Below, one piece after another: positions 31,788-63,786 of a DNA stretch of 64,000 nt. Position 1 is the stretch's first letter; every line of letters begins with the position of its first letter. The notes beneath the pieces were generated by a model, which worked only from the letters and a program-made list of their open reading frames with translations, did not search any database and was not told the origin of the DNA. A program made the position numbers and the translations under genes. Source of the stretch: Mizuhopecten yessoensis (Eukaryota); contig NW_018480077.1 of assembly GCF_002113885.1 (NCBI RefSeq), forward strand, positions 1,277,930 through 1,341,929, in the 5' to 3' direction.

Positions 31788-34700
31788 ATGGCATTTCTTT
31801 CAGAGACGTACAAAGTTGTGAACGATGAAAGCCCAATCATAAAAAGTCAACTTCAACGGCTGCCTCGGGATATCGAAAAAGAAGATGAACATTCCGTACC
31901 TTTAGTACTTGTTGAAGAACCGTCTCCACATCTGAAATGTACCGTGTGTAAACGGTTGTACCATGATCCTGTAATAAGTGTTAAATGTGGTCACACGTTT
32001 TGCAGAAAGTGTGCCTTCAGAGTTACCCACTGTCCAATAGATGGCCAACTGTGTGATACATCACAGCTTGTTGTGAACAGGTAGGCTTATTATGGATATG
32101 CATCGGTAGCTTTTAGGCTATCAGGTCACCTATCAAAATTGTATGTCGGACAACTAGCTAAGGCGTTGTCGCAAGTAGTAGGGGAATAATCTGTTACACA
32201 TGCATGTGTTTTAAAATACTGTTCAAGAATTGATGTACATTATGTAGTTTGTAGAGAGATATTATCAGGTCCAGTACACTCTGCAATTGAGCTATATATA
32301 GCTGTAAAGACAGTATCGGGTTGTTTCGCCCCAAATCCCATTCGCCCTAAGTTGTTTCGCCCTAAAACAATATATTTTTTCTTTAAGTCATAAATATCAT
32401 GTTATATATCATAAAAACATGCATACACATGCACGTTCATACACACTAACATCAGCAAGTATGCATGCACTTACATACATACACATGCATGTAAATACAA
32501 ACATACATGCCCATTTTTGCATAAGCACCAAAAATACAGATAATGTTCATACACTCTGCTAACCCATGTTGTGTTTGTTTTTGGAGAGAAAAACATCTAT
32601 CAACAAAAAGGCAAATTGTAGTATACAAAAAATTCTCAAAATAAATCCATCCATCCATCTTTGATCAAACGTTTCATTGTATAATTTTTTTACTGATAAA
32701 GCTTTCTCAATATCATATCTGAATGCAAGAAACTCATTCAAACCATTTAAACTTAACTTCTGGAAACAGCATATATATATATTATAATATTTTGTATACA
32801 AAATAATATAGTAAATGGGCATAGGAACATTTTCAGTAATTCCAAAAAGTATTGTTTCCAACTTAAAATCTATGATTTTCCTTATTCTGCTATATAATCT
32901 CTCTTTTAAATCTTGCCATAGCTTTAAGGACTGTGGACATTTCCAGAATAGATGTTCTGTAGTTTCTATTTGTATTTTACACATATTACAGATATTGTCA
33001 TTTGACATCCCAATAGTATTTACATAGTTTTTAATTGGGAGGATACAATTTTGTAATCTGTATTGAAACCATTGCAGTGTTGTGTCTTTTGTAACTTTAA
33101 AGACAATACTATATGAACTTTTCCAATCTATATTTTTAAAAATTTCTTTCAATACCCATTTTCTTTCAGCTGTATTTACTAATTTAATTTTACTATTTAA
33201 TATGTCATACATGTCTTTACAACCCTTTTTTTTTCTTTATGATAATATGAATATGACTTGGTACGAAGGGCCTCTCCAAAGTTGTTTCTGCAGTTAAGTT
33301 ATAATTTAATTGTTTACAACTTTGCCTAATAGACTGGCATATACTATGATAAATCAAGAAGTTTATATTGTATTTCAGTTTAAAATTTACAAAAGTTAAA
33401 AATGTTATTTTACTCTAATAGATCACAAACATTTTTGACACCCTGATCAAACCATTTTCGGACAAAAAAATACTTTTTGCCAATACCAAAGGAGGTATAG
33501 TTGATTTGAAAGAATAGTCTGTTGAATGTTTACATGTCATATTATTATTTTTTCATATTATTCCCTACAAGTGATTGTCCAGGAGTGCATCACGTATCCA
33601 CCGTTAAAAATCGATATCGACTTGGAGCACATGATTTTTGTTGAAGGACTGTGTGTTTCTAAAATTAGAATTATGACCATCTCCAAACAATTCACCGTCC
33701 CGCTTCCGAAGCTTTTTTGTTGTGTTTTTTTTTATATTGCTTACATTACTGTTTTGTAAAATAATAAAACAATTGTAGCCTTTAACTTCGGTCAATACCT
33801 GGATTTATCTACCCGAGAAAAGATATATCAACCTCGGACTGCGTCCTCTGTCAATATATCTCGGGTCGATAAATCCAGGTATCAAACTCAGTCAAAGGCT
33901 ATAATTGAATAATGTTGACCTAATCATTTGCTGAAAAAATAGCCAGTTCAGAGTTGATGATTAGCAGCTTTTAATGAGAACACTGTCTGGATACATAGAT
34001 TTTGCCAACATTTTCAGAATACAAGGTATGTAATTATAAGTACACATGTGTAGCCTTAATTCCTTTACAGGGTTCTCCCCAGAATTTTTTTAAGCTGATA
34101 TGTTTCATCTGCAACGAAAATTCAAGATGGACACGCTAATATAATACCTTATTATACCTTATCAAACCTAAGGGGGGGGGGTAATATTATGTTTAAAAGG
34201 TTACTTTTATTAACCAAACTTCTTTTGGTGAACATTAAAACCAAGGAAATAAATAAGTGTTTTTTATGTCTGAATTTCCAGCAATATTATNNNNNNNNNN
34301 NNNNNNNNNNNNNNNNNNNNNNNNNNNNNNNNNNNNNNNNNNNNNNNNNNNNNNNNNNNNNNNNNNNNNNNNNNNNNNNNNNNNNNNNNNNNNNNNNNNN
34401 NNNNNNNNNNNNNNNNNNNNNNNNNNNNNNNNNNNNNNNNNNNNNNNNNNNNNNNNNNNNNNNNNNNNNNNNNNNNNNNNNNNNNNNNNNNNNNNNNNNN
34501 NNNNNNNNNNNNNNNNNNNNNNNNNNNNNNNNNNNNNNNNNNNNNNNNNNNNNNNNNNNNNNNNNNNNNNNNNNNNNNNNNNNNNNNNNNNNNNNNNNNN
34601 NNNNNNNNNNNNNNNNNNNNNNNNNNNNNNNNNNNNNNNNNNNNNNNNNNNNNNNNNNNNNNNNNNNNNNNCCCTTTCCGGTTTGTACTTTACACAATCC

Positions 34701-37700
34701 AAGATGGCGACCATCACTAACTCAATACACACGCTATTTCAGCGTTGTCAAATGCAATCATATGTGAGTAAATTAATTTATAATAGATGTAATAAGTGTT
34801 TGTTTTGTTAATCCAACAGTAGGTACCTCAATTAATCACCTGTTGACCATGCTAAAAGGATCCGGTGGTAATTGCTTTAGGCTCCAGTGAGCACGCTTGC
34901 CGGACACCTGTGGGCTTGTCGTCCGGTCCCCCTCCCCACTAATTACAGCCCCCCTGTGGCAATACGCCTATCGTGCAAATGATCATGACCAGTGGGGTCA
35001 TTGCTGGACTTGGGTCAGCCGTGTGATTTAATCAGTGTCAATTTCTTGCGTAAAAAGATCACCTTCAGTACAAATAACAAGGTGATACGGTTCACAGTCT
35101 AAGGTGATACGGGTCAATTAAACTGATACGGCAGGGAGGATTTCAAACTGAAGCTGATACGGAGCCGTATCAGCTAAATGGCCTGGGGAGAACCCTGCTT
35201 TAGGAACTCTATCTAAATCAGAGATTTATAGTCTATCGTTATAAATCTCTGATTCAGATCGAGTTCCTACAGGAATTAGTATAGCCTTTGGTTGTTAATG
35301 ATCTGAAACTTGTGTTTGTTCCAGAATTGTTGTTGGACAGATTGAAGACTTGCTAATCCACTGTCAGTATGGGCTGACTGAGACTGATGGTGACCATTCT
35401 CCAGACCCCAGTGGCTGTCAGGAACACATCGTTCTCGGTCAGTTACCACAGTTATAGATATTCTGCATTAAAGCTAACAGCTCAGGAACAATTTTTACAT
35501 AACCTTTTCCTTTGTGTTTGTAATGTATATGTATGGAGATGTAAAATTCTGTTCAAAGCATGACAAACTTAACAACAGGTTTGATAAAACTTTATGCGTT
35601 TGTATATACAAAATATAATGAAATTCATAACTAACATTACATATATAATTATATAGAAGTACAGTATGAAGATAAAAAATGAAAAAAAATGAATTTTGTA
35701 AATTTCCTGATATTTCCCAAAATTCACATTTTCATCTTTTATTTTAATGACATGTAAACTAATCATGCTTTAAACAATTTAATTGTACCAATAACATAAT
35801 TGTGCCCAGAAATTCATATGCAAGGAGACTTAATAGGTATATATTAAAACTATTTGATCCTTTGTACTTTAAATTCTCCATACTGTTGAATCTACTATAT
35901 TCAATGTAAGTTATATTTTTTTTTTCTGTGTATATAGGAAACCGAGAGGAACATGAGGCTAACTGTGTATATGCCCCTGTCCCGTGTCCAAACAATTCTG
36001 GCCGGTGTGGGAGGTTTAGGAAATCAGAGCTTGACCAACACTTAGAGTTGTGTCAGTTCACACCATGCGGACACTGTGAAAAAGGTAACAGACTAATCCG
36101 ACAGCCTGTCCATATATCTTCATATGTAGTTGACAGTGGAGTACCATAACAAAGTTATTAATTTCTCAGCATCATTTCAACAATGAGGCACTGTTTTCAG
36201 TTATTCCAAAAAATATTGACTAATACATTTTGATGTCAGCCTAGTATATGACCTTGTATTATTCAATAACATGTTTGGTTCTGCAGGATGTGAGTTTATG
36301 AGCACTGCTGAGGAAGTTCGCAGCCATGAGGACACCACCTGTGGATACAGGGGTCTTCAGAAGAGTGTCAGCTTCAAAGATTTCAATCAACAAGTAAATA
36401 GCTCATACTTATCATCATTAAGTGTTTCTTAATTAAGCTGGACAGTTACTGGAAAATTATCTCATAAACCATAATAATGCATATTAGAAGGTTGTCTGAT
36501 AAACTGTAATGAAATCATGCTGGAAGGAATAGATAATGGAAAACGCTTTCTTTGAGGGAAACACACACATAGCAGACCTATGTATTTTATATTTCTGGTA
36601 ATTATAGGTGAAGATTTAATCACAGCTCACATAATGGTTTTAACTGATTACTTAATATCGTTGACATATGTTGTTTATGTGTGACATTTTAATTTTTTTC
36701 ACAGAACCGTGTTTTGGAAGAGAATAACAAAGAGCTGAGGGAGGAAGTAGGTTTGTTGACACAGCGAGTAGAGCTACTGGAGGGAGGGAGAGAGTACTTT
36801 CAAAAGCAACTCACATCCTGCACAAGGTATTAATATGTGTTTTAGCTAATCTGGCCTAAGTTGCCAAGTGAACTTATGCAATGTATAGCATCTGTCTTTC
36901 CAATGTCAATTTTTCCCTTTATGCTTCAACCAATTTTGTTCAAATTGATGACGTTGACCCACTTTATGTTTGCAAGGGTTAAATCCTGTTAAAATCTTTC
37001 GACAATTTCTTTTGAATAGCCAAGAAATCTGTTTTTGTTATGCTATTTTACCAGTAGAGTGCTTGGTTGAAGAACTGTAAATTTTGATCAAATGAATGAC
37101 CTTAACCTAATTTCAGGGTCACAGGAAATGTGTTAAAAACATTTATATGACTTTTTCTGGGTAACCAATGGGCCTAGAATGGTGCAGGGCTGTTTGGCGT
37201 CTTGTTATTTATTAAAATATATTATTTCTGTTGTATGACATGGTTTGAAAATTTGAAAGTCAGTTGGTAGATTGAAAAGATATTACTCTGATGCTCAAAT
37301 AATCTAACAGTTGGAATAATAGGGTAAGGTGTTCTATAGCCTCATCCTATTTTCCTTTAAAATTGAATCTAATACATGGTTACTATGCAATTATAAATGA
37401 AGTGATCCGGAGAATGTGGAGTAAATTACCAATTGAGCAAAACTTGGAAATGAGATAAGACTATGTAATATAGCAAAACTATGATATAATTTATTATACA
37501 GTAGCCTACTGGCCCTACAGCAGAAGTACGAAAATATCCAAGGATTGGTGGAACAGTTACTGAGTGGTGGACGAAATAGGCGATCGTCAGGGTCTCCAGG
37601 CAACTCCCAGGATGTGGTCAGGCACCGCTCAAGTAGCTCAAGTATGTAATCATGTCACACTGAGGTACAGGACGTGGTGATCAGGTTTTATTGTAGGATA

Positions 37701-40700
37701 GTTTCATTTGTCATCATTTCTGAAAGGAGACAACAATATTATACTAGGCTACATTCGCTTATCCCAGTTGAAACGGTACGTGTGGCGCAGAAATATTCCA
37801 TGATAAACGAACGCACTTGGACCATTTTATAAGCAGAGCTAAAAATGCACAGTTTCAGAGAATAAAAACAATGTATCAAGAATAATATGCCCTTCTTTCA
37901 TCCGTTCACTTAACTACATAACGTATCTTAAAAACTACATGTGACTTGACATTGTTTTAGAAAGAAATAACGCATTTTAGTTTCGGTCAGGTACGTCTGG
38001 ACCCCTCAATCTACACGTGCCAAATTTTCCTGAGGTCAGCCTCGGTTCAGATCTGTGTCTGTCGTTTTCTTCTCAAGTTCAACCGGTTCAACCGTTTCAA
38101 CCAGATACGCGAATGTACCCCTACTGTAAAACACCATGCTGTTGCATGTACAAATGAGTAAGACCTAGAAGATTGTCAATGAGTTACTGAGTAGGACAAA
38201 GAAAATCATGTAATTGATGATGTGTTAAGGAATCCAATGTTTTTTTATGAAATGGGGAACATGAAATACATAAAAGATTGTTAGATTAATTTTTTTCTGA
38301 ATATTTTGCACACATGGTTAAACGTTACAAAAATTGAGTGGTTACATGTATAAGTGTGTTTAAACCTCTGATGCGATTGTTCCTTGTATACCAACTCAAG
38401 AAACATTTCAGCAACAATTAAGTAGAACCAGGGCACCATTTCGTTTACATGTAACAACCGCAAAGTATATTTTCCAAATTGTTTGTTGCCTATATTAAAT
38501 TAACCAGTTATGTCATTCAACTAAACAAGTGCACCATCCATATGAATCACCTGCTATCCAACTGTTGGTGCTCATTAAGTAAATTGAATAAAAAAATCTA
38601 TTTGCTGTATAGTGATCATATCTGGTTGGGTGTGAGGTCTAAAGCTTTTGACAACATTTACTCAGGGTAGACATTATTACTGCCTGCTGTTTTTGTAGGA
38701 GGGGTTTGACTTTTGGCCTTAAATCAACTTTTGGCATTAAATCAACTTTTGTCGGGCCCAGGAGTAACATCTTATAAATAACTGTTTATTGTTCATTTTA
38801 GGAAAAACCCTTGGTAAAAGCATTGATTTTCAGCGTCCAATCTAGTGTTGTATATTCATATTACTATAAATTAGAATAAGGAACAGTTGAAGAGGTACCT
38901 TTGGGAAGTTGCCACTTTTCTTACATAAATAACAAGAGTATACTGAGATGTATTGTATACTCTATGTTCAGGTACAGCATTGGTGATTAGGTCCCGTCCA
39001 GGATCCCCAGCCAAGGGCGAGGATTGGCAGATGCCTTTCCAGTTCAAGTGTATAGGGACATTAAGGTAAGAGTCGGCATAAAATCTAAATTTTGTTATAT
39101 ATAAAAGCACACAGTCAATTAAATGATATTTCCATTGTGGCAGGGAAAATGAACAAATGTTAAATTAAAGTATTGAGAAATACATGTAGGTAGGAAGTAG
39201 ATGTGAACCTCATCTCTGACTGGGATTTAATCAGTAACAACACTGAATGGTGATGTCATTGTATTTCTAATGTTGTATAGCCAGAAATGTTTTAAAATAT
39301 ATGAGTACTTACGTTTCATTATATTTTTACAACTTCGGTATTATGCCACAGAATACAAATTCTGTGAAATGGTTGAATAGAACATGGAAGTTTCATACAT
39401 CGATTAAGTGCTGTAGATGTTAATGGAAGAAAAATATTAATTAAGTGTTGTACATGTTAATGGGAGAAAAATATTAATTAAGTGTTGTACATGTTAATGG
39501 GAGAAAAACATTAATTAAGTGTTGTACATGTTAATGGGAGAAAAACATTAATTAAGTGTTGTACATGTTAATGGGAGAAAAACATTAATTAAGTGTTGTA
39601 CATGTTAATGGGAGAAAAACATTAATTAAGTGTTGTACATGTTAATGGGAGAAAAACATTAATTAAGTGTTGTACATGTTAATGGGAGAAAAACATTAAT
39701 TAAGTGTTGTACATGTTAATGGGAGAAAAACATTAATTAAGTGTTGTACATGTTAATGGGAGAAAAACATTAATTAAGTGTTGTACATGTTAATGGGAGA
39801 AAAACATTAATTAAGTGTTGTACATGTTAATGGGAGAAAAACATTAATTAAGTGTTGTACATGTTAATGGGAGAAAAACATTAATTAAGTGTTGTACATG
39901 TTAATGGGAGAAAAACATTAATTAAGTGTTGTACATGTTAATGGGAGAAAAACATTAATTAAGTGTTGTACATGTTAATGGGAGAAAAACATTAATTAAG
40001 TGTTGTACATGGTAATGGGAGAAAAACATTAATTAAGTGCTGTACATGTTAATGGGAGAAAAACATTAATTAAGTGTTGTAGATGTTAATGGGAGAAAAA
40101 TATTAATTAAGTGTTGTACATGTTAATGGGAGAAAAACATTAATTAAGTGTTGTACATGTTAATGTGAGAAAAACATTAATAAAGTGTTGTACATGTTAA
40201 TGAGAGAAAAACATTAATTAAGTGTTGTACATGTTAAACGAAGAAAAGCTGCATTTTTTCTGTAAAATTGATTGTATTCGTTTTTCTCTGATCTGTAGGG
40301 GACACAAGGACATTGTGTGGTGCCTTGCCACTCAGCGACAGAAGTTGTGCAGCTCTGGAGCAGATGGTTTGGTGAAGGTTTGGGACATGGAGACCCTGGC
40401 CAAGGGCTGTATCAAGACACTGGAGGGCCACAGTAAAGTGGTACGACATGTTTTACCTGAAATAAGCAGATGGAAAATGTTAAAATGAAAAATAATCCTT
40501 TATACTGATTTTCTCTGTATGATCTGTCATTAAGTGTTTCATGTTTTTGTACTAAGTTCTGTAAAACCAGGTCATTTTGAAATTTTACTCTATGGAGTAT
40601 TCAATGGCATCATTGCTAGGCAAAGTTAATATCAGTATTATGATGACAGGTCCACACGATGGTTGCCAGTGGGGACATTTTATACACGGGAGGCGGTGAC

Positions 40701-43700
40701 ATGTCCATCAGGGCGTGGAACATGGAGACACTCACACAGCATTCAAGCGTTGAGGTAAGAAGAAATCACACAAGCAGTTGTTTAATTGTTTTATAATTAT
40801 ACCTGTTGGGTTTCTGACACTCTTATCGGGGGCAAGTGTTTTTCATGATCAGACGCACCGCTGCTTCAATCATATCATAAAAGATATAAATAAAACCTGA
40901 AAAGATCAGAAAAACTTAAAACATTAGAAATCAAATCATTATCTCTCCTTTAGTAAATGAAAACTGAAGTAAGGTTATGGTTAAAATGCATGGGGGTAAT
41001 CAGTTGGTTTACACTATTTGTTGTAATACATATTTCTAGTTTTGCCACTTTGCTAAGTCAAGTGTGAAACGCATGTAAAAATGGGTGAAAGATTTTAATT
41101 GACATGTACATTTGAATGGGATATGGATCGTTAGTGAGGGATATTATTATCATATAACAATAAATCATTGTGTTGATGGGTACCTTTAGATGTTACACGA
41201 CATCATGTTGCGATATATTTACTGGTAGGTGTTTACCTCCTATTTTCAGAATGCGCATGACAACATTATTACAGCCATGGTGTTGGTTGGTGACTACCTC
41301 TTCTCTGCATCACATTCCCTCATCAAGGTTTGTTGCAATTCCTATAGACCTTGTTAAGATTGTTGATTATTTACAGTGTTTCACAAAATTTAAATTCACA
41401 AAATTTAAATTCACCTATTTAATAGCTATTTGTTGCAAAAAAAAGTTTTCTCCATTAAATTTAAAAATTGTACTGTAACTGGTAGAATCTGTACAAATTA
41501 CAAAAAAATCCCAATGATATTAAAATGCTATAAAGAAGCTAGTAGAATCTTATAAGATCACAAGAAAGTTAAAATGAACATTCCAATTAGCATTCTCAAT
41601 TGTCATTGAAGCCAACTTTTGAATACTGAAGATTTGTTACAGAACCTCTTTAAATTGCATATCTTAAGCAATACTATGTGAATCTGCTATTTAGAAAACA
41701 TGTCCACTTCTCTGACAACCAGTTAATTAATTAGAGAAAGCTCAAACATTTGAGAGATCTGCTGATTAAAAAAATTGTGAGGACAGAACATTCTCAGAGA
41801 GAAATTGGGGAAATATTTCATAGCTTATGAGACAAATTGTGATAACAAAATGAAATTTCTGTTCGGTTATTTTGTTTTAAATTTGAATGTTATTCTTTCA
41901 AGGTAACAAAACCAATTCTTTACTTAATTTTGCATTGAGATGAAACACTCTAGTCTAGTGGTAGGACGCCGGGCTCATGACCGAAGGGTTGCAGGTTCGA
42001 GTCACATCACAGCACTTTGTTGTATCTTTGAGCAAGATACTTTACTCCGCTTGTTCCAGTCTACTCAGCTGTAAATGAGTACTTGGTTGGGAAGTGCTAG
42101 AATTAATGAATGCTAGATGTGAGCACCGAAATGGCAGCACAAGCTGTATGCTCCCCATAATTTCTACGAAAATCACTGATTTTGTTTTACTCTTGTTTCT
42201 GATTTGTTTATGTTGCTTGTTTAGGTCTGGGAAGCGAAGACACTGACACATAAACACACTATATCAGGATTGCACCATTGGGTGAGGGCGCTGTGTCTAA
42301 ACAAGGCAAAGGTCAGTATTACTCAGGTTTTAAATGTTGCTTCCTGATCAGTCTTTGCACCAATGAATTGCACTTTGTCAAACTATACAAATCTTATATA
42401 CGGGTATATAACCTTTTAACTGTTACAATCAGTGGAATTTTACATCACCTTTTCCCAGATCTAACAAAGCTATACGATGACATGGTTACCAGGTATCCTA
42501 TTTTACTATTGTAGACATCACTGTACCCAGTTTGTTGTCATCTGTTGGAAGAGCAATACATTTCCTACCTTATAATTACTTATGTTTGAAAATCTGAATG
42601 TTGTCATGACGACAGCTCAGCTAGTGGGACGAAACATGTAAACTTGGATTTAAGTTGCTTATACACTGCAGTAAATGTTGCCATTGACGTCTCTTCCATT
42701 TAATTTATATTTCATTTAAATTTCATAATTAGTTTTATGGAGACAGTCCTGACAACACCATATAACACCATATTCTGTAATTTGTGTGGTTACAGGATCG
42801 CCTGTACAGCGGATCCCACAACACAATAGATATTTGGGACACGACAGGGACCTTTGACCTAAAGGGGAAGATTGACCACGCCTTCGGGTCAGTGTACTCT
42901 CTGGCCATCACACATCAGTATGTTATAGCAGGTACGGTCAGCATACAGTGGACATCATTGTTCAAATGTAGATACATGTGTCAGTCCCTGCTCTATTTGT
43001 AGGATAATTCAGCCGCAGTAAGCAGTGTGAGGTTTAGAGTGTTCAAACCCTGGTGTCCTGGTAAGTGCAGGTTTGACTTCCTTTATCAGGGGCAACTTAC
43101 ATTGGCCTCTGAAGAGAGTCTTAAAATAACTGTATAGAAATATTCATCATAGAGTTTGGGTAAAACATGTGTGTATGTAAGTAAGATGTAATGAAATATA
43201 GAGTTTCTGAGACAGACTTTCTTGCTATACATATATTGGTATACCTCCTACTTTTCTTTTGCATAAGAAATATACAAGTCAGTGTACTATTTGTTTTTTG
43301 GTAATTTAATTACTACATGCAGTTTTTACATACATTGTATATTCTGTGGCATTTAAATTTCAAAGAGGTTTTATACTTTTGGCATGAAATGATATGCAAT
43401 ATTTAAACATAGTGAATTCATTGCACTTTAGAGAGCTTGTTAAGACACTATTAGGTCATGGTGTTTTACAAAATTCAAACCTCTTGAATGGAATTGAAGC
43501 ACAGCTATATATAGTTATGTGAAGACCAAAGCTCTTAGTCTTGTTTCTTATTTTTAAAGCCAGTTACAATTTAAGGATGTTCTCTAATGGGACAGAAAAA
43601 TGGTATCAATTGATCAGGTTCATAATTGAAGCACCTGTAAATTGAATGTTTCGATTACCATATTTGGAGTTTGCATTAACGAGATTGTCGTTATGTTAAC

Positions 43701-45844
43701 ATTTGTTTAGGTACCTACAACCGACTCATACAGCTGTTTAACATCGAGTCACATGATCACATTGGGTCATTCAAAGGACACATCGGGACGATATGCAGTC
43801 TTGTAGCAGCGCCCTCCGGGAGATTTTTGTTTTCTTGTTCCACAGACCAATCCATAATGGTGAGGGATGTCCTGCATGAATTAGCCGATCAGAATCACTT
43901 TTACAGCATGTCAGTGGCTTTCTTTAGATTCCTGTTAGACTGCAATTCTTCAAATCTAGCAGACGGCTGAGTAATTGATAAATTATTGTATATTTGCCCC
44001 CGCACTAGGATTTGGACCTGTGTCCTCCGCACTAGGATTTGGACTTGCGGTATAAAAATACATCAGAAACTTTTGATAAAATTTGATGTATCTGTTTTAA
44101 TCTTTGGTAGGGACTTACAACCAGAACATTCAGGTGTTTGATGTAGAAACCAAGCAGCATACCAGGTCTTTCCAGGGCCACATCGGGACAATCAACAGTC
44201 TGATTACCTCCCATTCTGGCCGATTTCTCTTCTCCTCCTCTATTGACAAAGCCATACAGGTGATTCTGATGCGCTAGTAAAATATCACTTTTCCATTAGA
44301 ATATTACATTGCTAGGTAGTTTATACGGTAATAAATTTGTATGAATGTTCTTCTATTTAAAAGTATGTTGTACATGTATTTTGTAAAATACGTTGGGAGT
44401 TGTATAAGTTTTCATGGTAGGCTAGTCAATTCAGTATGATTTTGACCTGTGAGTAAAATGTTTACTTGTTTTATATTTTTCGGTTTTGAACTAGTTTCAT
44501 TTTAGTTTTATTTCCTTCAGTTATTACACCATTAACTGTGAGATGAGAATGTAATACTTCTGGTCTAGAAAATGTTTGTTCTAGCATTTCACTAGCTATT
44601 CTGATAAATTGCTTATGCAGTCATTGAAACTAAATATTTTATGTTGTAGATATGGAGCCTTGAGCTGATGCTTCCGATCCAGAACCTGAAGCGTCACGAA
44701 GGCAGCGTCAACACCCTCATACTGCTGGGAGACTATCTCATATCAGGCTCGGAGGACCATGAGATCAAGGTAGGAAAAATGGAATTGATTAAATATCCAA
44801 CATAATTACAGAAAGGAAACCAAATAAAAATTATATTTTAGGTCATGTTCATTTTCGTAGGAATAATGTGAGATTGATACAGGTTTAAAGTCGGGTACCA
44901 TGGTACCTTTCATTAAGTATCGTATTAAGGTACATGTGATATAAGTATCACGCCTCTGTACTTTCTGACTTTAATGCATTACATTCGGCCATTTACTACT
45001 CCCTAAGTAAAAACTTCTGAGTCAAATATAATGCCTCATTCAAACTAGGTTAGTGTGCGGTATACCATAGTAAAAGTTAATAATTGTCTAGAAACCCTTA
45101 CTGGGTAATTTGTTTCACAAAAACATGTATTGTATATGTCTGAGTTTTGTTATATCAAAAGGCATTAGGATCCAAGAGAAAAAAGGAACAGAAACAAACT
45201 TTTATAAAAAAAAATAGCCAAAAAAAATATTTCACTAAGGATACTGTAAAAGTGGAAATGTTCGAGGTGTGGAAATGTTTGCATTTTTCGTGTTGAGTAA
45301 ATTAGCGCTAAAATAACGACATGGAAATTGATGGAAAATTGATAGATTTCAGAACTATTTCCAACGTAGCAAAAATTTCCCACTTTTACAGTACATATAT
45401 TAGCATAGTAAGGGAGGTAACTTTGCTAAAATATTTTTGAAAAATAATAAAATGAAAATAAAATGAAGTTCATAACATTTTTGAATGATATTTGAACAGA
45501 TGATTGCAAAAATAAAATTCAGGAGTTTTCTTCATTTCAATATCAAATCCCCTTCAAATCAAGACTCTTTGAAAATCTCCCACAATGTGATCAGTGCAAA
45601 TCAGTTATTGTAACAGTATTGTCCCCTGTTGATGTGAGGTCATTTCTATTGTCGATTGCATGAGCAAGTAGAACAAGTAATATTTAGTAGTTTTGTCAAG
45701 TAGAAATGAAAATGTTGCGAAACAACCGCTGATGGGACTGAAAACTGATTTTCAGATAAACAGGGTTTATTCTGATTTTTCTGCTCTTTTTTTCAGGTTT
45801 TCAAATACTTTCAGATGCAGATGGGTTTTGCACTGCAGACATAG
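31788..45844 (+). CDS. TRAF7: TRAF7-like E3 ubiquitin ligase (RING, TRAF-type zinc fingers, coiled coil, 7 WD40), 626 aa, two isoforms
   Basis: join(31788..32080,35325..35437,35938..36084,36287..36393,36705..36826,37502..37641,38972..39065,40299..40440,40650..40754,41250..41327,42225..42311,42796..42931,[43711..43859 or 44111..44259],44650..44769,45797..45844); GT-AG, phases consistent. Motifs CTVC...CGHTFCRKC...CPID, LIHCQYG, FKCIGTLRGHKDIVWCL, GLHHWVRAL, GSVYSLA, RHEGSV. May be a paralogue rather than the strict orthologue. Confidence 0.88.
32560..33560 (-). mobile_element. L1/Tx1-like LINE ORF2 C-terminal fragment (zf-RVT region)
   Basis: ORF 32559-33212: LQWFQYRLQNCILPIK...CNMCKIQIETTEHLFWKCP...LW. 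Degenerate continuation upstream. Confidence 0.7.
33770..33907. mobile_element. Palindromic foldback MITE
   Basis: Arms CAATTGTAGCCTTT...ATACCTGGATTTATCTACCCGAGA / TCTCGGGTCGATAAATCCAGGTAT...AAAGGCTATAATTG. Confidence 0.7.
34068..35197. mobile_element. hAT5-like non-autonomous transposon spanning the assembly gap, nested in a hairpin MITE
   Basis: Perfect 15-bp TIR CAGGGTTCTCCCCAG / CTGGGGAGAACCCTG; CTTTA duplicated at 34063-34067 and 35198-35202. Confidence 0.75.
34291..34671. other. Assembly gap (N run)
   Basis: 381 N bases. Confidence 1.
37747..38120. mobile_element. PIF/Harbinger-like MITE
   Basis: ~30-bp imperfect TIRs GGCTACATTCGCTTATC..GTTGAAACGGT / ACCGTTTCAAC..GATACGCGAATGTACCC; CTA on both flanks. 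Confidence 0.65.
39403..40240. repeat. 37-bp minisatellite, about 22 copies, in TRAF7-like intron 7
   Basis: Unit ATTAATTAAGTGTTGTACATGTTAATGGGAGAAAAAC; near-perfect centre. Confidence 0.97.
41944..42157 (+). mobile_element. 3'-truncated copy of the CORE-like SINE family seen at 19241-19594
   Basis: Alignable A-box, B-box GGTTCGAGTC, core TGTATCTTTGAGCAAGATACTTTACTCCGC, and CTGTATGCTCCCCA. Confidence 0.8.
43711..43859 (+). CDS. TRAF7-like mutually exclusive exon 13a (WD40 repeats 5/6)
   Basis: 149 nt, phase 1 to 0, AG/GT; GTYNRLIQLFNIESHDHIGSFKGHIGTICSLVAAPSGRFLFSCSTDQSIM. Confidence 0.85.
44111..44259 (+). CDS. TRAF7-like mutually exclusive exon 13b (paralogue of 13a)
   Basis: 149 nt, phase 1 to 0, AG/GT; GTYNQNIQVFDVETKQHTRSFQGHIGTINSLITSHSGRFLFSSSIDKAIQ. 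Confidence 0.85.
45242..45393. mobile_element. Tc1/mariner-type MITE
   Basis: TIRs TACTGTAAAAGTGGAAAT / ATTTCCCACTTTTACAGTA. Confidence 0.7.
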
Positions 45845-52258: not shown

Positions 52259-53722
52259 ACAAGAGGCCCATGGGCCTTAACGGTCACCCGAGTTCTGATA
52301 TATTTATACAAAGAGTTGATTTTTGTTTTTAAAACATGAACAGAGATATTATTCAAAGTGACAAAAAAAACCCAATAAAACCACCTTATTCAATATCTAG
52401 CATACAGATTTAAGACTGAAAAGTATTTGAAACTAGCACCTCTGATTCTAAACAAGGAAAATGAAGAAATTTTAGCACACCGACTCCTTTGGCCCCTAGG
52501 GGAGATCTGGCTCAAAATGTTCAAAGTATCAAACTGTCAACTCAGGGTTATAATTCCAATCAAGTTATCAACATGTAATATCCAAAGTATCATTTGCCAA
52601 TATAAACCATAAAAAAAAAAACCCAGTCAATTCAACCCTTTTTGGCCCCACCCATTAGCCCCTGGGGGTCAGTCAGGGATGATATGTGCATACCATCAAA
52701 CTGCACTCCAATACAGATAATGATAACCTAAATTGAATTACTTCCAATGGAAATTAAACAAATGTTGGTCCAAAATGTGATTTCCCTATATAAACTATAG
52801 TAAAATTTACCCCCTCCCCAGGGGGAACATGAGACCCCATAACAACGCAGTCATGAAATTCACAATTTTGGTAGAGCACCTTAAAACCCTTCCATCTATT
52901 TTTAAGAGTATTTGATTCTACCATTCTACAATATCTGGGTCTGGAGAAGATTTTGAAATTTCAGTGAATTTAACCAGTTATGGCCCAACCCATCAGCCCC
53001 GGTGGATCAGTCAGGGCTGATAAGTGCATACCATCAAACTGCTTTCCAATACTGATAATGCTAACCCAAATTGAATTACTTCCAATGGAAATTAATCAAA
53101 TGTTGGTCCAAAATGTGATTTTCCCTATATAATCTACAGTAAAGTTTACCCCCTCCCCAGGGTCATGAAATTCACAATTTTGGTTAAGCACCTTAAGACC
53201 CTTCCATCTATGAAGAGTATTTGATTCTACCATATCAGGGTCTTGAGAAGAAGATTTTGAAATTTCAGTCAATTCAACCCTTTTTGGCCCCACCCATTAG
53301 CCCCTAGGGGTCAGTCAGGGCTGATTTGTGCATACCATCAAACTGCTTTCTAATACAGATAATGCTAACCCAAATTGAATTACTTCCAATGGAAATTAAT
53401 CAAATGTTGGTCCAAAATGTGATTTTCCCTATATAAACGACAGTAAAGTTTACCCCCTCCCCAGGGTCATGAAATTCACAATTTTGGTAGAGCACCTTAA
53501 AACCCTTCCATCTATTAAGAGTATTTGATTCTACCATATCTGGATCTTGAGAAGAAGATTTTTGAAATTTTTGTCAATTTGACCCTTTTTGGCCCCACCC
53601 TTAGGCCCCTGGGGGCTGAGGACCATATAATTCACAATTTTTGTTGACCTTTGGCCATGGAAGGTTTCTGCAAAATTTCATTGAAATTGGTTCAGGGGTT
53701 TTGGAGAAGAAGTCGAAAATGT
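52259..53722 (+). mobile_element. HINE/Helentron-like element carrying ~305-bp tandem repeats
   Basis: 5' ACAAGAGGCCCATGGGCCTTAACGGTCACC. Repeat units start near 52625, 52963, 53268 and 53573 (GTCAATTCAACCCTTTTTGGCCCCACCC...GAAGAAGATTTTGAAATTT). Ends TTTTGGAGAAGAAGTCGAAAATGT. Confidence 0.7.
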
Positions 53723-57788: not shown

Positions 57789-60700
57789 TCACGTTGTGAT
57801 GAAGTTTTTCTCATTACTGAGGTAACTTTCAATAGCCTTCTGTGTTTCAAACGACGGCCATCTTTCCAGGAGGAGATTACTCTCAGACTCATTTGTCAGC
57901 TCTAACTTGGTTCGCTGATGGCTGCGAATCAGAAGCTTTGTTGTTTCAAGGGCCTGTGCAAAAAAAAATTGATATGTTAATACCACAGATGAAACACTGG
58001 TTTCAATTATACACAACTTATAGTAGTCTAATAATCCGTACAGACATTTTTAGACTATCTGTTTCATTTAATTTTTCTCAATTTAAAACATTGTACATTT
58101 CATTGTAAGATCATCCATATTGAAATTTTACAAACTGAAACTTCTTTGATTATTTAAACACCAAACTCTCACATAATAGTATCATTTATATCACACTTTA
58201 ATTGACATGATCTCTATTGCTTCACAGGCAATCTCCAAAATCAGTATCTGTAATAATGATGATTGTCAGACACAAAATCAGTATGTGTAATAATGATGAT
58301 TGTCAGACACAAAATCAGTATCTGTAATAATGATGATTGTCAGACACAAAATGGTCAAAGTACCTTGCCCGACATGCTCGCCATGTTTTGGATTCGCGGA
58401 ATGACCTCTTGCATAATACTTGTCGGCCAAAACACCTGAGATACCAAACCCAGCTGACATGCTTCAATGGCTGTGATTTTACGTCCTGCAATCAGCAACT
58501 CGTTGGCCTACAAGGTATATCATTTCATCAATATATACAATGCAATTCAAAAGCATAAATTATTCGCTTAATCTACCGTGTAAAAAAAATAAAAAATCAA
58601 ATAAAAAAAAAGTCTTAACATCACAGCGGTGTGCCTGATAATATATACATCTGTAATTATTTTTCCTACAAACGTTCAACATGCATATCTTACAATAAGT
58701 TATTAAATTTTCAGAACAGGTCTTCTTCACAATTCAGAATGATATTTTTTTCTTTATTAAAGATGCCAGAATATAAAGTGTAAAATTATGTATGAGAAAC
58801 AGAAACAAAGTGAGTGGAGCTCACATTACCACCCTTCCCCCAACCCCGCTTTGCTATGACCTTTGACCCTTTAACCTCGACCAATGACCACCAAAATCTA
58901 GCCAGGTGTAGAACTTAATTTTACCATTACCATACTATATTTATGTAAATATACCGGTAAGATAAATTTATTTAAGACTCATACACACACTGACGAATGC
59001 ATTGACAAAGTGATTAATACATATATACCCTCCTCAATAGTTGGAGGGGTATCATAATGTTAATCTCGCTACCAAAATTAAACTAAACATGACAACATAA
59101 ATGCCACACTTTTTAACTGTTTTGTCAAATAATATGAGAAGGAAAACTCAGTGTTTGTTAAACTTTCTTTTTTTTGTAATGACTATATTAAACACCAAAA
59201 ACATAGTTATATAATGTCGATTGTTTTCATATTAGGCCTTTGGTTCTGATTGAAGATCAGGCCAATGTGCAGTTGGTAAGTATAGCATAGCAGTGGTGGG
59301 AGACAACCCAACAGATATCAATTTGTAAAACTAAAGTGCAATATTGGCCTGACCTCTCCTAAACAATTATTTTCTTAATTAATATATATATGACACCTAC
59401 CATTGCCATGCCTATTGCTGATGGAATTGAGAATGTGGCACCCCCTTCAGGAGTTTGTGCAAGCTGAGCATAAGGCAGATGGAATGTGGCCTTGTCACTA
59501 GCATAAACCACATCACAGAGTGGCAACATGGTCATGCCAAGGCCCACCGCTGGTCCTGTTACGACGGCAACAATCGGCTTTGGAAACGTGATCAGGGATT
59601 TGGTAAAATCTCTATCAATATAAAAAGAACAGCAGATATAGCAGGGTGCTTGTTTAATAGTATTCAAAATCTTGAATATTATACAGAAAACAAACAACCT
59701 TCTATTAAGCATGTAAAAAGCTTACTTAAGTGCAAAATGTGTGGAAATATTGTAGTTTGTTAATCTTTATTTTTTCGAAAATTTTCATACTCGATATTGT
59801 GAAAGACTATATTTTACGATTACTTTAAGAAAATAAGACAAATAAGCTTAAAATGAATTCAAAATATTTTAATTACGATGCATTTAGAAATAATTGTTCC
59901 TTACATTTTAACAACATACACATACATGTATATGCCCTCCATCCTTTCATTTCTAATGACTCTTTGCCTTAGTTGTAAATTCAAGTATACCAGCATTATT
60001 ATACATATTAAGAAAAGATATAAAGGTTGAGTGAAACTCAAATTATGTCTTAAAAAAATTAGAATAGAAATGTTGGTTAGCGAAATGAAGTATGCATGAA
60101 ATATATTCTGAGCAATCTTGTCGTTTTATACATTTTATGTGCCACCTACCTCAAGGCGTCAACCATCTGGCGTGATGCGACACGTTTGTCTCCTCTGACG
60201 AGGTAATGGAGGTCAAGGCCCTGACAGAAAACATTGCCAAGCCCACTAAACATGACTAGGTTACTGTCATCGTACTTGGCCGAGTTCAGTGCAGAGCAGA
60301 TCTCCTGTATGACCTATGAGCATAACACAAGTTGAAAGAATATACTATGTATTTCACTAGCACTGTAAAGATCTACTGGTCAAAACTAAATACACTTAAT
60401 GGAACTACACTGGAATACCTCCCTTCCGTAATTTAAACATGCAATATTATGATTTTATATGATTCAAAATACAAAATGTATGTAATGTTGCCACTGTGAT
60501 GAGTTTGATTCAGTTATTTTGTATATATGTATCTCTCATTTAAAACTATTGATGAAACAATGTACCTCATGGCCCTTTCATTTCAAAATTTTATTTAAAC
60601 AAAATTGGTTCAGAAATCAATTCGCTAGAAATTGAGATATGAAGAAGAATCCGACAGGATGGAATTGTTATGGGCCACATTTATGCATGCCAGCCTCCTT

Positions 60701-63700
60701 TATTTTAATCCTCCCCCGCCCATAAATAAAAATTCTGGTTGCATAAAAATGAAGTTACAATGTATGAAATTTATATAATTTGGAATACATTCTAGTTTGT
60801 TATGTGTTGGCTTATTCATTGTCAAATATCTCTCCAGAAAGAGTTTACACAGTACCTGTGGATTGAGAGCATTCTTTATCTTGGTGTGAGTGTTCATCCA
60901 GATCTGTGTGTATTTGGAGCACTTCTTAACCACAATATCCTTGTAGCGAAATGCGCATTCACTTTGTCTTACACTGATCCTCCTTTCCATCTCCTCTGGG
61001 GGCGAGTCACCATTCTCAACACGCTTACCTCCCTTTGGTTTTAACTGTTGGGGTAGTCTATCGAGGAACATACGGTATGACATCGACGACGGACTGACGG
61101 GGATCACCGCAGGGAAATACTGGTAGGCGGGTACATCACCACACAGTGACTCCATGTTGGCAGAGGAAGAGGCAGCAGATGGGGACGTCTTTATAACACT
61201 TGCCTTGCTCATAGGTTTTACCGTGGTGAACAGGGGTGTTGGTGACACAGGCCTTGCTACTGAGGAAATAATGAGGATCAAAATGTCTTAAAATTGTCTC
61301 CCTAGCTACTAGTGATGACTGAAAGGATCTTATATTTATGTAATCGTAAAAAGACCTGCCTTAAATAATTTTAAACCTTTTAAGAAGGGAACATTATATA
61401 TTCAAGTTTATATCATAATGTTCAAAATGTTGCCCAAATCTCAAAAGGTTAGTTTTTGCTCTTTGTACTTTTGGATATTTTTCTATCAATCATGTACAAT
61501 TTTTCTGTATAAAATCTTCCGAAAATTAGGAAAATATGTATTTTTATAGAAAACAAAAATGTATAAATAGCTGAGCAATGAAACATGTCTAATTATAAGT
61601 CATTTATCTATCATATCAATCCTGTTGGTGTGTAATACCACTGTATATACATGTATGTATAGACATCTAGATAAAATTGGTTTAAGAATAATATAACTTT
61701 GAACTATTCAGTTGTGAACTTTTAATATTGCAAGAGGCCTAAATACACACACAAAAATAATGATACACGAATACGTACCTTGTTAATCAATATTGCATTA
61801 ATTTAAATTGAGTAAGGATGGAAGAAATATGGTTATTATTGTGCTTACACAATAAATTTGCTTGATATAATTTAACCACACTTGTATCTTGAACAGGTCT
61901 GTGGAAATCCTTGACTGAAATTGCCCTCCAAAAATTGAATTATAAAATCTACATAAATTCATTTTAATCTTTACAGCTGAAACGACTCATCAAATAATAT
62001 TACCAGGTATACATGTACATTTTCTTGTGTACATACCAAACTATTTAGTTTGCCTAGCTGTATCGTGATCATGATACACCAACAATTACTGCTATCATCT
62101 CATCAAGTAAAAAATATATATATAAAAAAATTGTACACACTTGGTAAATTAGATTTGGGTTTAAATATAAATATAAATAAACTCACATGGCAACATCACT
62201 TTCTTGGATTTTATACTGTCTATCAAGTGCAGCTTCTTCCTTGGAACATCCGTAGTCCTGAGGGGGCTGATCTTGACTTGCAGGATGCGCTTGCCACCAG
62301 GTGTCGTCGGTGAACTTTCCTTAGAACCCTGAACCTTGGCCCCGACGGCCTTAACACTGACACTGCTGTCATTCTTATTACCGAGGACAGATTTATTAGC
62401 TACAACTTTCCATGAAATGTCTTTGGATTTAGGACACACTTTTTTAGAGGACAAACATTGTTCATCTCCTGAAGAATCTGACTTTTCATCAGAGTCCATA
62501 TCTATCACTTCAATATCATTCGGACTATCTTTTACATTTTTCTGCTGTTTTTTCTTTGCTCTTATTTTTTTCAGGCATTCCTCCAACTCGTATGTACCTG
62601 TCCCTTTATCATTTTGACAATCTTTTGAATGTTCAGACTTTTTTGTTTCTTTCTGTCTTGAAACCTGAGATTTACTCTTCGGACTCGAGTTTAAAGATTT
62701 TAATTTTATTTTCATTGAAAAATGTTTTGACTGTGACTGTTTCGAATCAAAACCTTTCGTTTTAATCAAACTTGGCATCTTCTTCAAAGCTACACATTCT
62801 TCTTTGCCGAGAGTTTTATTTTCTTTCTTTTTCACATTTTCCGTTTTTGTTGGTTTAGGAGATCCTTTTGTCTTTATATTCTTCACAGTCTTTTTAGTTT
62901 TCACTTTTTCTTGAGCAATTTTCTTACTTTTTTTAAGCACTTTTTTAGCTGCATTGGAAGAATCCTTCTTTTTTCCAGTTGACTTGCTAATTCCCTTCAC
63001 AGAGGTAACTGTCTTGCGCTTTTTTGTACCTTTATTATCTGTTGTGGAAAGAGAGGTACTTGGTCTCTTGGTGGCTTTCTTCTCAGAACTCTTTTTCAAG
63101 CTTACAGATTTTTTCTTTTCCTTATCCGATCTCTCTTTTTTCAAAGATGGCGATTCTGTCTTTTTCAAAATCTTTTTCTTTGAAGGTACAGGTGAATTTC
63201 CTTTTCCTTCAATAGAAACTTTAGAAGCTTTGGTTTTTCCAGAGTTTGGGGAAATTGCTTTTCCATTAACCTTTTTTTTTGCCGATCCTTGTGACATAAT
63301 TTTTCCTTCTATAGAAACTTTCTTCTTTTTAGTAGCAGGCTGTCGGGGACTTGAATCTGTGTCTTCAGCCTTTCTTTTCACTGAATAGTTTTTCACAATT
63401 TTCTTACTAGGAGACGGGCTGAGCTTACCATCTTTTGCAACATGCACATTTTTACCTTTTTCTGGAGACTTTGTAGATTTTGGAGACTGTACATGTTTGC
63501 TAGCTTGTTTAGGAGATGTGCTTTTAGATTTTGCTTCAAACTTTTTGTGTTGAATGTTTTTGCTGATTAGCTCCATAGCAAAATCATGGGCTTCATCTTT
63601 CAGTTTTGCAGATGAAGATTTTTGAGCTTTTCCACCATTTTTCTCTTCAAAGTCTTTGAGAAGATGGAGACAATCGAGTAGGTTTTCTAGAGGTTCCCAT

Positions 63701-63786
63701 GTGTCCCATTCTTCGTTGAAACCTTTCCATCGAATTAGATATTCCAGTGTGGTATCATTCACTCGTCTATCTAAAGCATGCTCAAC
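57789..63786 (-). CDS. CDYL: Chromodomain Y-like protein (chromodomain, Lys-rich linker, crotonase/enoyl-CoA hydratase domain); first exon lies outside the window
   Basis: complement(join(57789..57953,58364..58507,59401..59611,60150..60313,60856..61259,62187..63786)), with a possible extra exon 61849..61914. Motifs VEHALDRR..EYLIRWKGFNEEWDTWEPLENL, FRYKDIVVKK, NVFCQGLDL, FPKPIVAVVTGPAVGLG..LPLCDVV, QTPEG, ANELLIAGRKITA.EAC.LGLVSQVFWP. Confidence 0.92.
58237..58351. repeat. 37-bp tandem triplication in the last CDYL intron
   Basis: AAAATCAGTATCTGTAATAATGATGATTGTCAGACAC x3. Confidence 0.9.

What the first reader, a model, noticed from the sequence alone, without database searches (positions are those of the whole stretch)
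43711..44259. Tandem duplicated, mutually exclusive WD40 exons in the TRAF7-like gene
Seen: two 149-nt exons with the same phases (1 to 0), intact splice sites, open frames and about half their residues identical (GTYN..IQ.F..E......SF.GHIGTI.SL....SGRFLFS.S.D..I), while many third positions differ. Including both or neither shifts the frame, so exactly one must be used. Inference: two isoforms swap part of the beta-propeller, the partner-binding surface in TRAF7, and both are under purifying selection. I know of no such MXE in vertebrate TRAF7.
Basis: partly seen in the sequence, partly recalled or inferred. Interest (0 to 1): 0.72.

Follow-up and report, generated by a model that had tools for sequence, protein, structure and literature searches.

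The report
Duplicated alternative WD40 exon in TRAF7
A scallop gene for the signalling ubiquitin ligase TRAF7 carries two ancient tandem copies of one 149-base exon, wired so that an mRNA can keep its reading frame only with exactly one of them; this is a familiar kind of splicing switch in a new gene, and I could not get RNA evidence that both copies are used.

Summary
Exons 13a (43711-43859) and 13b (44111-44259) are both 149 nt, with AG/GT splice sites, phase 1 to 0 and open frames. They share 29/50 residues and 62% of bases. They are true duplicates: 57% identity, E 3e-16, against 40% or less over 20 residues between any other WD40 exons of the gene.

Using both exons or neither gives a premature stop 113 or 106 nt before the next exon junction.

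The duplication is ancient. Synonymous sites are saturated (pS 0.85) and the flanking introns no longer align. Protein-level change stayed low (dN 0.29), and unconstrained divergence is rejected (P about 1e-5). So both copies were kept as coding sequence, which together with the frame argues for mutually exclusive use.

The gene has RING, TRAF zinc-finger, coiled-coil and seven WD40 parts in 15 coding exons (620 aa) and is single-copy.

Not shown:
- conservation in other species, because length limits kept the protein searches from reaching TRAF7 relatives.

A complement to the 13b donor site lies in the 13a-13b intron. It is stronger than chance, but its predicted pairing depends on context.

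The scan had already noted the same kind of exon pair elsewhere in this genome (ARF6, ferlin, quaking, COQ2, CSTPP1). Verdict: a new member of a known kind, of moderate interest.

The parts
31788..32080 (+). Coding exon 1 of the TRAF7-like gene: start codon and RING finger
   Evidence: Pfam zf-C3HC4_2 1.1e-7 and zf-RING_UBOX 2.9e-7; donor CAG|gtaggc in phase 2
35325..36393 (+). Coding exons 2-4 (35325-35437, 35938-36084, 36287-36393): linker and TRAF-type zinc finger
   Evidence: zf-TRAF 5.4e-4, 21 bits, below the 27-bit cut-off for the single exon; frame-consistent GT/AG junctions
36705..39065 (+). Coding exons 5-7 (36705-36826, 37502-37641 tentative donor, 38972-39065): coiled-coil region and linker ending ...FKCIGTL
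   Evidence: Stop-free segments and junctions
40299..42311 (+). Coding exons 8-11 (40299-40440, 40650-40754, 41250-41327, 42225-42311): WD40 repeats 1-4
   Evidence: Pfam WD40 4.9e-8 on exon 8; junctions
42796..42931 (+). Constitutive exon 12, ends in phase 1 (...HQYVIA + G)
43711..43859 (+). Alternative exon 13a (149 nt, phase 1 to 0): strands c-d of blade 5 and a-b of blade 6 of the WD40 propeller
   Evidence: Pfam WD40 7.5e-6
43882..43903 (+). Intronic element complementary to the 13b donor; the 11-nt core 43888-43898 pairs perfectly with +1..+11 of that donor
   Evidence: Inverted repeat I1; in the minimum-energy fold; duplex -27.3 kcal/mol against a null of -21.2 +/- 2.0, 0 of 100 shuffles; pairing probability about 1 in the 13a-to-intron-14 context but 0 when intron 12 is added
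44111..44259 (+). Alternative exon 13b (149 nt, phase 1 to 0), paralogue of 13a
   Evidence: Pfam WD40 7.5e-5 and Beta-prop_WDR36-Utp21_2nd 7.7e-9
44255..44276 (+). Donor splice site of 13b, second arm of the complementarity
44650..44769 (+). Constitutive exon 14 (WD40 repeat 7), phase 0 to 0
45267..45296 (+). Tentative last coding exon (VWKCLHFSC, stop); weak acceptor without a pyrimidine tract
   Evidence: with it the coding sequence sums to 1863 nt, 620 codons plus stop, with all phases consistent

Best explanation
Exons 13a and 13b are an ancient tandem duplicate of one exon of a single-copy scallop TRAF7-like gene, and they are used as mutually exclusive alternatives. Each encodes the same 50 residues of the WD40 propeller, from the end of blade 5 through the first two strands of blade 6. 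The two proteins have the same length and fold. They differ at 21 positions, mostly in loops and exposed strands. Exclusivity is enforced at least by the reading frame: 13a+13b or neither gives a premature stop more than 100 nt upstream of an exon junction, so such mRNAs should be removed by nonsense-mediated decay. A second layer is possible but unproven. An element 23-44 nt downstream of 13a pairs with the 13b donor. It would mask that donor whenever 13a has been joined to exon 12, and it would be removed with the intron when exon 12 is joined directly to 13b. Shown: the anatomy, the frame logic, homology of the pair, and long-term coding constraint. Inferred: present-day use of both exons, decay of the out-of-frame forms, the role of the RNA pairing, and any difference in partner binding.
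For: Anatomy and frames. True duplication rather than ordinary repeat similarity. Only these two copies in the 988-Mb assembly, with no paralogue, retrocopy or second haplotype. Ancient origin with constraint: pS 0.85 (saturated), dN 0.285, 9/10 shared fourfold sites differ, intron flanks at chance (z -1.5 and 0.7) against exon z 4.6. Random substitution to the same DNA divergence gives protein identity of at least 28/49 in 1e-5 of trials and third-position excess in 1e-4. All WD40 signature residues (GH, S-x-S-x-D, hydrophobic strand positions) are kept in both copies. Both score as WD40. No U12-type sites, and the intron between them is 251 nt, so neither spliceosome incompatibility nor steric hindrance applies. 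Frame-shift exclusivity is a recognised mechanism for such pairs (PMC5740500). Complement to the 13b donor.
Against: There is no orthologous locus or protein: searches did not reach any TRAF7 relative, and the blank for 13a is matched by a blank for the 13b control. The paralogue comparison measures the two lineages together, so a recent loss of use of one copy cannot be excluded. The RNA pairing disappears from the predicted ensemble when intron 12 is included, where a second complement at 43628-43639 competes. No covariation test was possible.
Confidence: 0.7

Rival explanations
1. Only one of the two exons is spliced in today, and the other is a relic that stopped being used recently enough to show no damage yet.
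For: No expression or cross-species evidence was obtained. The pairwise dN/dS cannot be split between the two lineages.
Against: Both copies keep AG/GT sites, pyrimidine tracts, open frames, equal length and every WD40 signature residue, although neutral sites are saturated and the introns are unalignable. A copy unused for more than a small part of that time would have decayed: only 22-25% of randomised copies stay stop-free, and 1e-5 reach the observed protein identity.
Confidence: 0.17
2. The second copy acts mainly as a poison exon. Its inclusion together with the first gives a premature stop and tunes TRAF7 mRNA level by nonsense-mediated decay, rather than making a second protein.
For: Joint inclusion gives a stop at 44144-44146, 113 nt before the next junction. 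The 251-nt intron between the copies is long enough to be spliced.
Against: A poison exon needs no protein-level conservation. Yet the differences between the copies fall mostly on third codon positions and are conservative, and the fold signature is intact.
Confidence: 0.08
3. Both exons are constitutive and add an extra blade, as the scan found for duplicated CLASP exons in this genome.
For: Each exon is about one WD40 repeat long.
Against: 149 + 149 nt shifts the frame and gives a stop 12 codons into 13b. No nearby alternative GT or AG restores the frame.
Confidence: 0.02

Closest known systems
Mutually exclusive exon clusters born by tandem exon duplication (human atlas of 1,399 such exons, PMC5740500)
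   Same: Neighbouring homologous exons of equal length and phase, with GT-AG sites and no in-frame stops. Joint inclusion shifts the frame, the mechanism that paper lists beside splice-site incompatibility and branch-point proximity. The swapped part sits inside a folded domain and modulates the protein rather than rebuilding it.
   Different: The gene: TRAF7 does not occur in that atlas's held supplementary files. Here the splice-junction criteria that the atlas requires for validation could not be tested.
Other duplicated alternative exons in bivalves: oyster alternative oxidase (PMC5589949), and this scan's notes on ARF6, ferlin, quaking, COQ2 and CSTPP1 in the same scallop genome
   Same: Tandem duplicated exon in a bivalve gene, one copy per mRNA.
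   Different: A different gene and domain (WD40 propeller of a RING ligase). Those cases had RNA or cross-species support according to their reports, which I did not check; this one has neither yet.
Vertebrate TRAF7 (RING, TRAF zinc finger, coiled coil, seven WD40 repeats)
   Same: Same order of domains, found exon by exon. The C-terminal ...IKVWKC resembles the vertebrate C-terminus as I recall it; that recollection was not tested.
   Different: No duplicated exon is reported for vertebrate TRAF7 in the papers searched. Orthology was not tested by reciprocal search.
Competing RNA structures that control mutually exclusive splicing (docking and selector sites, as in insect Dscam1 exon 6 and 14-3-3 xi; from general knowledge)
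   Same: An intronic element base-pairs over a long distance with a site next to an alternative exon.
   Different: Here the target is the donor site of 13b itself. There is one strong pair rather than one selector per exon. The prediction depends on context, and conservation is untested.

Membership tests
Mutually exclusive exon pair (criteria of PMC5740500) | Neighbouring exons of one gene with significant sequence similarity | tested here: met
   57% identity over 49 residues, E 3e-16; other WD40 exon pairs reach at most 40% over 20 residues
Mutually exclusive exon pair (criteria of PMC5740500) | Same reading frame and similar length, no in-frame stop, GT-AG sites | tested here: met
   Both 149 nt, phase 1 to 0, open, AG/GT
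Mutually exclusive exon pair (criteria of PMC5740500) | Joint inclusion absent, or leading to a frame shift and premature stop | tested here: met
   Stop at 44144-44146 if both are used; stop ending at 44663 if neither is used
Mutually exclusive exon pair (criteria of PMC5740500) | Splice-junction reads from each exon to the flanking exons, bridging the other copy | not testable with these tools
Mutually exclusive exon pair (criteria of PMC5740500) | Both copies kept in related species | not testable with these tools
   No TRAF7 relative was reached; the own genome has no relatives in the genome search
TRAF7 | N-terminal RING finger | tested here: met
   zf-C3HC4_2 31.9 bits against a cut-off of 27
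TRAF7 | TRAF-type zinc finger after the RING | tested here: inconclusive
   zf-TRAF 21.1 bits, E 5.4e-4, below the 27-bit cut-off when one exon is scored alone
TRAF7 | C-terminal seven WD40 repeats instead of a MATH/TRAF-C domain | tested here: met
   WD40 hits on exons 8, 13a, 13b and 14. Seven GH...WD units can be read along exons 8-15. No MATH hit on any exon scored; exons 2, 5-7 and 9-11 were not scanned.
TRAF7 | Orthology by reciprocal best match to named TRAF7 proteins | not tested
Docking/selector RNA control of mutually exclusive splicing | One docking site and a competing selector for each alternative exon, conserved with covariation | tested here: not met
   Only the 13b donor has a partner stronger than chance (0/100 shuffles). 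The 13a donor and the three acceptors do not. Pairing is lost in the larger context. Covariation is untestable.

The most novel reading that the evidence does not exclude
The pair is an old switch, possibly shared across molluscs or wider. It would give TRAF7 two propellers with different surfaces on blades 5-6, and so different partners or substrates, chosen by tissue or immune challenge. The choice would be locked by an RNA helix that hides the 13b donor once 13a has been joined. This would be the first natural isoform switch in the TRAF7 WD40 domain, the domain that I recall, from general knowledge not checked here, carrying most human disease mutations.
Probability: 0.25. Interest if true: 0.6.

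Novelty: new member of a known kind. Interest (0 to 1): 0.4.

Why it matters
TRAF7 signals through its WD40 propeller. In the papers seen here, human TRAF7 variants in meningioma and in a developmental syndrome usually lie in the WD40 domains (abstracts). A natural two-version propeller in an invertebrate would point to residues on blades 5-6 that tune partner choice without breaking the fold. It would also add a signalling ligase to the list of bivalve genes diversified by duplicated exons. As a mechanism it is ordinary: tandem exon duplication with frame-enforced exclusivity is well described, and the scan has already noted several such pairs in this genome.

Tried and rejected

2. The search of protein representatives with a profile of 13a and 13b: the ranking sums all WD40 repeats, so the 150 listed proteins are multi-repeat giants. 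None matches the RING or zinc-finger exons, and none exceeds 47% identity to 13a or 13b.

3. The search for homologous proteins with 13a, and with the stop-free frame around 13b as a control: both were blank. The tool sees only proteins of 0.55-1.75 times the query length, so the blanks say nothing.

4. An alignment with a long carrier row, to move that length window: candidates were flooded by low-complexity words of the carrier. The two hits are unrelated WD40 proteins.

5. Metagenome scan: only a bacterial-type WD40 at 37% identity.

6. PDB sequence search: no TRAF7 chain among the best 60 matches listed, so no template mapping.

7. Protein atlas with the RING exon: generic RING clusters only.

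8. Own-genome DNA search for a second haplotype, to read polymorphism: none found.

9. Rfam over 30-48 kb: nothing.

10. All searches were exon by exon, by reference. The gene's length was obtained by adding exon lengths only.

11. Rejected readings: assembly or haplotype duplicate (only 62% identical); U12/U2 incompatibility (all donors are GT[AG]-type U2 sites); steric hindrance (the intron is 251 nt).

Full report
**What is there.** The window is AT-rich animal DNA. It lies in a 988-Mb assembly of 82,659 contigs. Earlier notes of this scan call the organism a scallop.

On the + strand between 31.8 and 45.3 kb lies one gene. I rebuilt it exon by exon from stop-free segments and frame-consistent GT/AG junctions. 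It has 15 coding exons whose lengths add to 1863 nt, that is 620 codons plus a stop, and every phase agrees.

Scored one exon at a time against Pfam:
- exon 1 is a RING finger (31.9 bits);
- exon 3 is a weak TRAF-type zinc finger (21 bits, below the cut-off for a lone exon);
- exons 8, 13a, 13b and 14 are WD40.

Exons 5-6 read as coiled coil. This is the TRAF7 architecture. Orthology was not tested by reciprocal search. The 381-N gap (34291-34671) lies in intron 1 and was left alone; exon 1 joins exon 2 in frame without it.

**The observation.**
- 13a is 43711-43859 and 13b is 44111-44259. Both are 149 nt, preceded by a pyrimidine-rich tract and AG, and followed by GTGAGG or GTGATT.
- Both run from phase 1 to phase 0 and are open.
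- They share 29 of 50 residues and 93 of 149 bases. Differences fall 18/8/30 on codon positions 1/2/3.

WD40 repeats resemble each other anyway, so I compared every exon peptide with the whole window. 13a against 13b gives 57% over all 49 residues (E 3e-16). No other pair of WD40 exons exceeds 40% over 20 residues. The pair is therefore a real exon duplication.

The peptide of 13a finds only 13a and 13b in the whole assembly, and the 2.2-kb region has no second copy. So there is no paralogue, retrocopy or haplotype duplicate. At 62% identity the two cannot be an assembly artefact.

**Frame logic.** With both exons the frame shifts, and a stop appears at 44144-44146, 113 nt before the 13b donor. 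With neither, a stop ends at 44663, 106 nt before the exon 14 donor. Both stops lie far enough upstream of a junction to expect nonsense-mediated decay. For the double skip, this depends on the tentative last intron (44770-45266). No nearby GT or AG restores the frame for joint inclusion. This excludes the reading that both exons are constitutive, which this scan reached for duplicated CLASP exons in the same genome.

**Age and constraint.** Nei-Gojobori counts give pS 0.85, above the saturation level, and pN 0.24 (dN 0.285). Nine of ten shared fourfold sites differ. The 150 nt of intron on either side of the two exons align no better than shuffled sequence (z -1.5 and 0.7), while the exons give z 4.6. 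The duplication is therefore old enough to have erased all neutral similarity.

I scattered the observed 55 base differences at random over either exon, 100,000 times each:
- a stop-free frame was kept in 22-25% of trials;
- the observed protein identity was reached in 1e-5 of trials;
- the observed BLOSUM score was never reached;
- the third-position excess was reached in about 1e-4 of trials.

Both copies also keep every WD40 signature residue. Coding constraint on an internal exon can act only if it is translated. Given the frame, translation of one copy needs exclusion of the other. This is the main argument for mutually exclusive use. It is an inference. It covers most of the time since duplication, but not necessarily the present.

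**What the swap changes (inference from the canonical WD40 repeat, not modelled).** The exon runs from the b-c turn of blade 5, through strands c and d, to strands a and b and the b-c turn of blade 6. Of the 21 differing positions:
- about six lie in turns on the top face (5, 6, 22, 45, 47, 48 of the 50);
- seven lie in bottom-face loops (12, 14-16, 33-35);
- two lie on the exposed outer strand;
- six are conservative changes in core strands.

So the two isoforms should share the fold and differ on both faces and the rim of blades 5-6.

**How exclusivity may work.** All donors are U2-type and the intron between the copies is 251 nt. That removes spliceosome incompatibility and steric hindrance, and leaves the frame. 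There may be an RNA structure as well.

The strongest inverted repeat in the three introns pairs 43882-43903 with 44255-44276. The first arm starts 23 nt downstream of the 13a donor; the second is the 13b donor. The 11-nt core 43888-43898 is perfectly complementary to +1..+11 of that donor.
- The helix appears in the minimum-energy fold.
- Its duplex energy is -27.3 kcal/mol against -21.2 +/- 2.0 for dinucleotide shuffles (0 of 100).
- The other five splice sites tested have no unusual partner.
- In the context from 13a to intron 14 it forms with probability near 1 and leaves the 13b donor 11% unpaired, against 41% once the arm is removed.

This fits a model in which joining exon 12 to 13a keeps the arm and silences 13b, while joining exon 12 to 13b removes it. 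But when intron 12 is included the helix vanishes from the ensemble, and a second complement at 43628-43639 competes. No orthologue was available for a covariation test. I give this layer about 0.3.

**What could not be done.**
- No TRAF7 relative was reached. The single whole-library search ranked multi-repeat WD40 giants first.
- The word-indexed search cannot see proteins longer than 1.75 times a 49-58-residue query. It was blank for 13a and for the 13b control alike.
- A carrier-row alignment was swamped by low-complexity words.
- The metagenome scan found only a bacterial-type WD40.
- No search, exact look-up or structure prediction of the spliced protein was made.

**Comparison with what is known.** The pair meets every sequence criterion that the human mutually-exclusive-exon atlas uses for candidates. 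It falls in that atlas's frame-shift class (PMC5740500), but it lacks the junction reads needed for validation.

TRAF7 has no occurrence in the atlas's held supplements. No paper in the library links TRAF7 to such splicing, and the mouse Traf7 event is a skipped exon. I found no mollusc TRAF7 splicing report.

Duplicated alternative exons are known in bivalves, for example oyster alternative oxidase (PMC5589949). This scan has already noted the same kind of pair in ARF6, ferlin, quaking, COQ2 and CSTPP1 of this genome.

**Verdict.**
- Probability that this is a real alternative pair used one at a time: about 0.7.
- It is a new member of a known kind.
- Interest is moderate (0.4), pending RNA and cross-species evidence.

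Noticed in passing
window 43628-43639 and 43882-43903, both against 44255-44276: Two separate intronic elements are complementary to the 13b donor site: one 72-83 nt upstream of 13a, the other 23-44 nt downstream of it. They would compete for the same target. Which one wins changes with the folding context.
   Followed up: partly
window 43894-43905 and 44284-44295: The motif ATCACTTTT(A/C)CA occurs 35 nt after the 13a donor and 25 nt after the 13b donor, in introns that are otherwise unalignable. It could be a retained splicing element or chance (family D6).
   Followed up: no
window 43997-44047: A 24-nt unit (CC[CT]CCGCACTAGGATTTGGAC[CT]TG) occurs twice, 27 nt apart, inside the 13a-13b intron. 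The intron as a whole is unique in the genome.
   Followed up: partly
window 45267: The acceptor of the presumed last coding exon (VWKCLHFSC, stop) has an A-rich upstream region and no pyrimidine tract. The exon is accepted only because the peptide continues the last WD40 repeat and closes the frame.
   Followed up: partly
window 57792-63786, minus strand: The neighbouring gene, tail to tail with TRAF7, has a chromodomain followed by a long Lys/Ser-rich exon and enoyl-CoA hydratase exons. This is the architecture of chromodomain Y-like (CDYL) proteins.
   Followed up: partly
window 32562-33212, minus strand: A 217-residue open frame in TRAF7 intron 1 carries the zinc-binding domain found in reverse transcriptases (zf-RVT, 5.5e-7). 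It is probably a retrotransposon remnant.
   Followed up: partly
window 52757-53573, minus strand: Three similar open-frame units (...WKGFKVLYQNCEFHDPGEGVNFTV.YIGK...) lie about 300 bp apart between the two genes. This is a local tandem repeat of unknown nature.
   Followed up: no
window 34291-34671: A run of 381 N lies in intron 1 of the gene. It was not filled. Exons 1 and 2 join in frame across it.
   Followed up: yes
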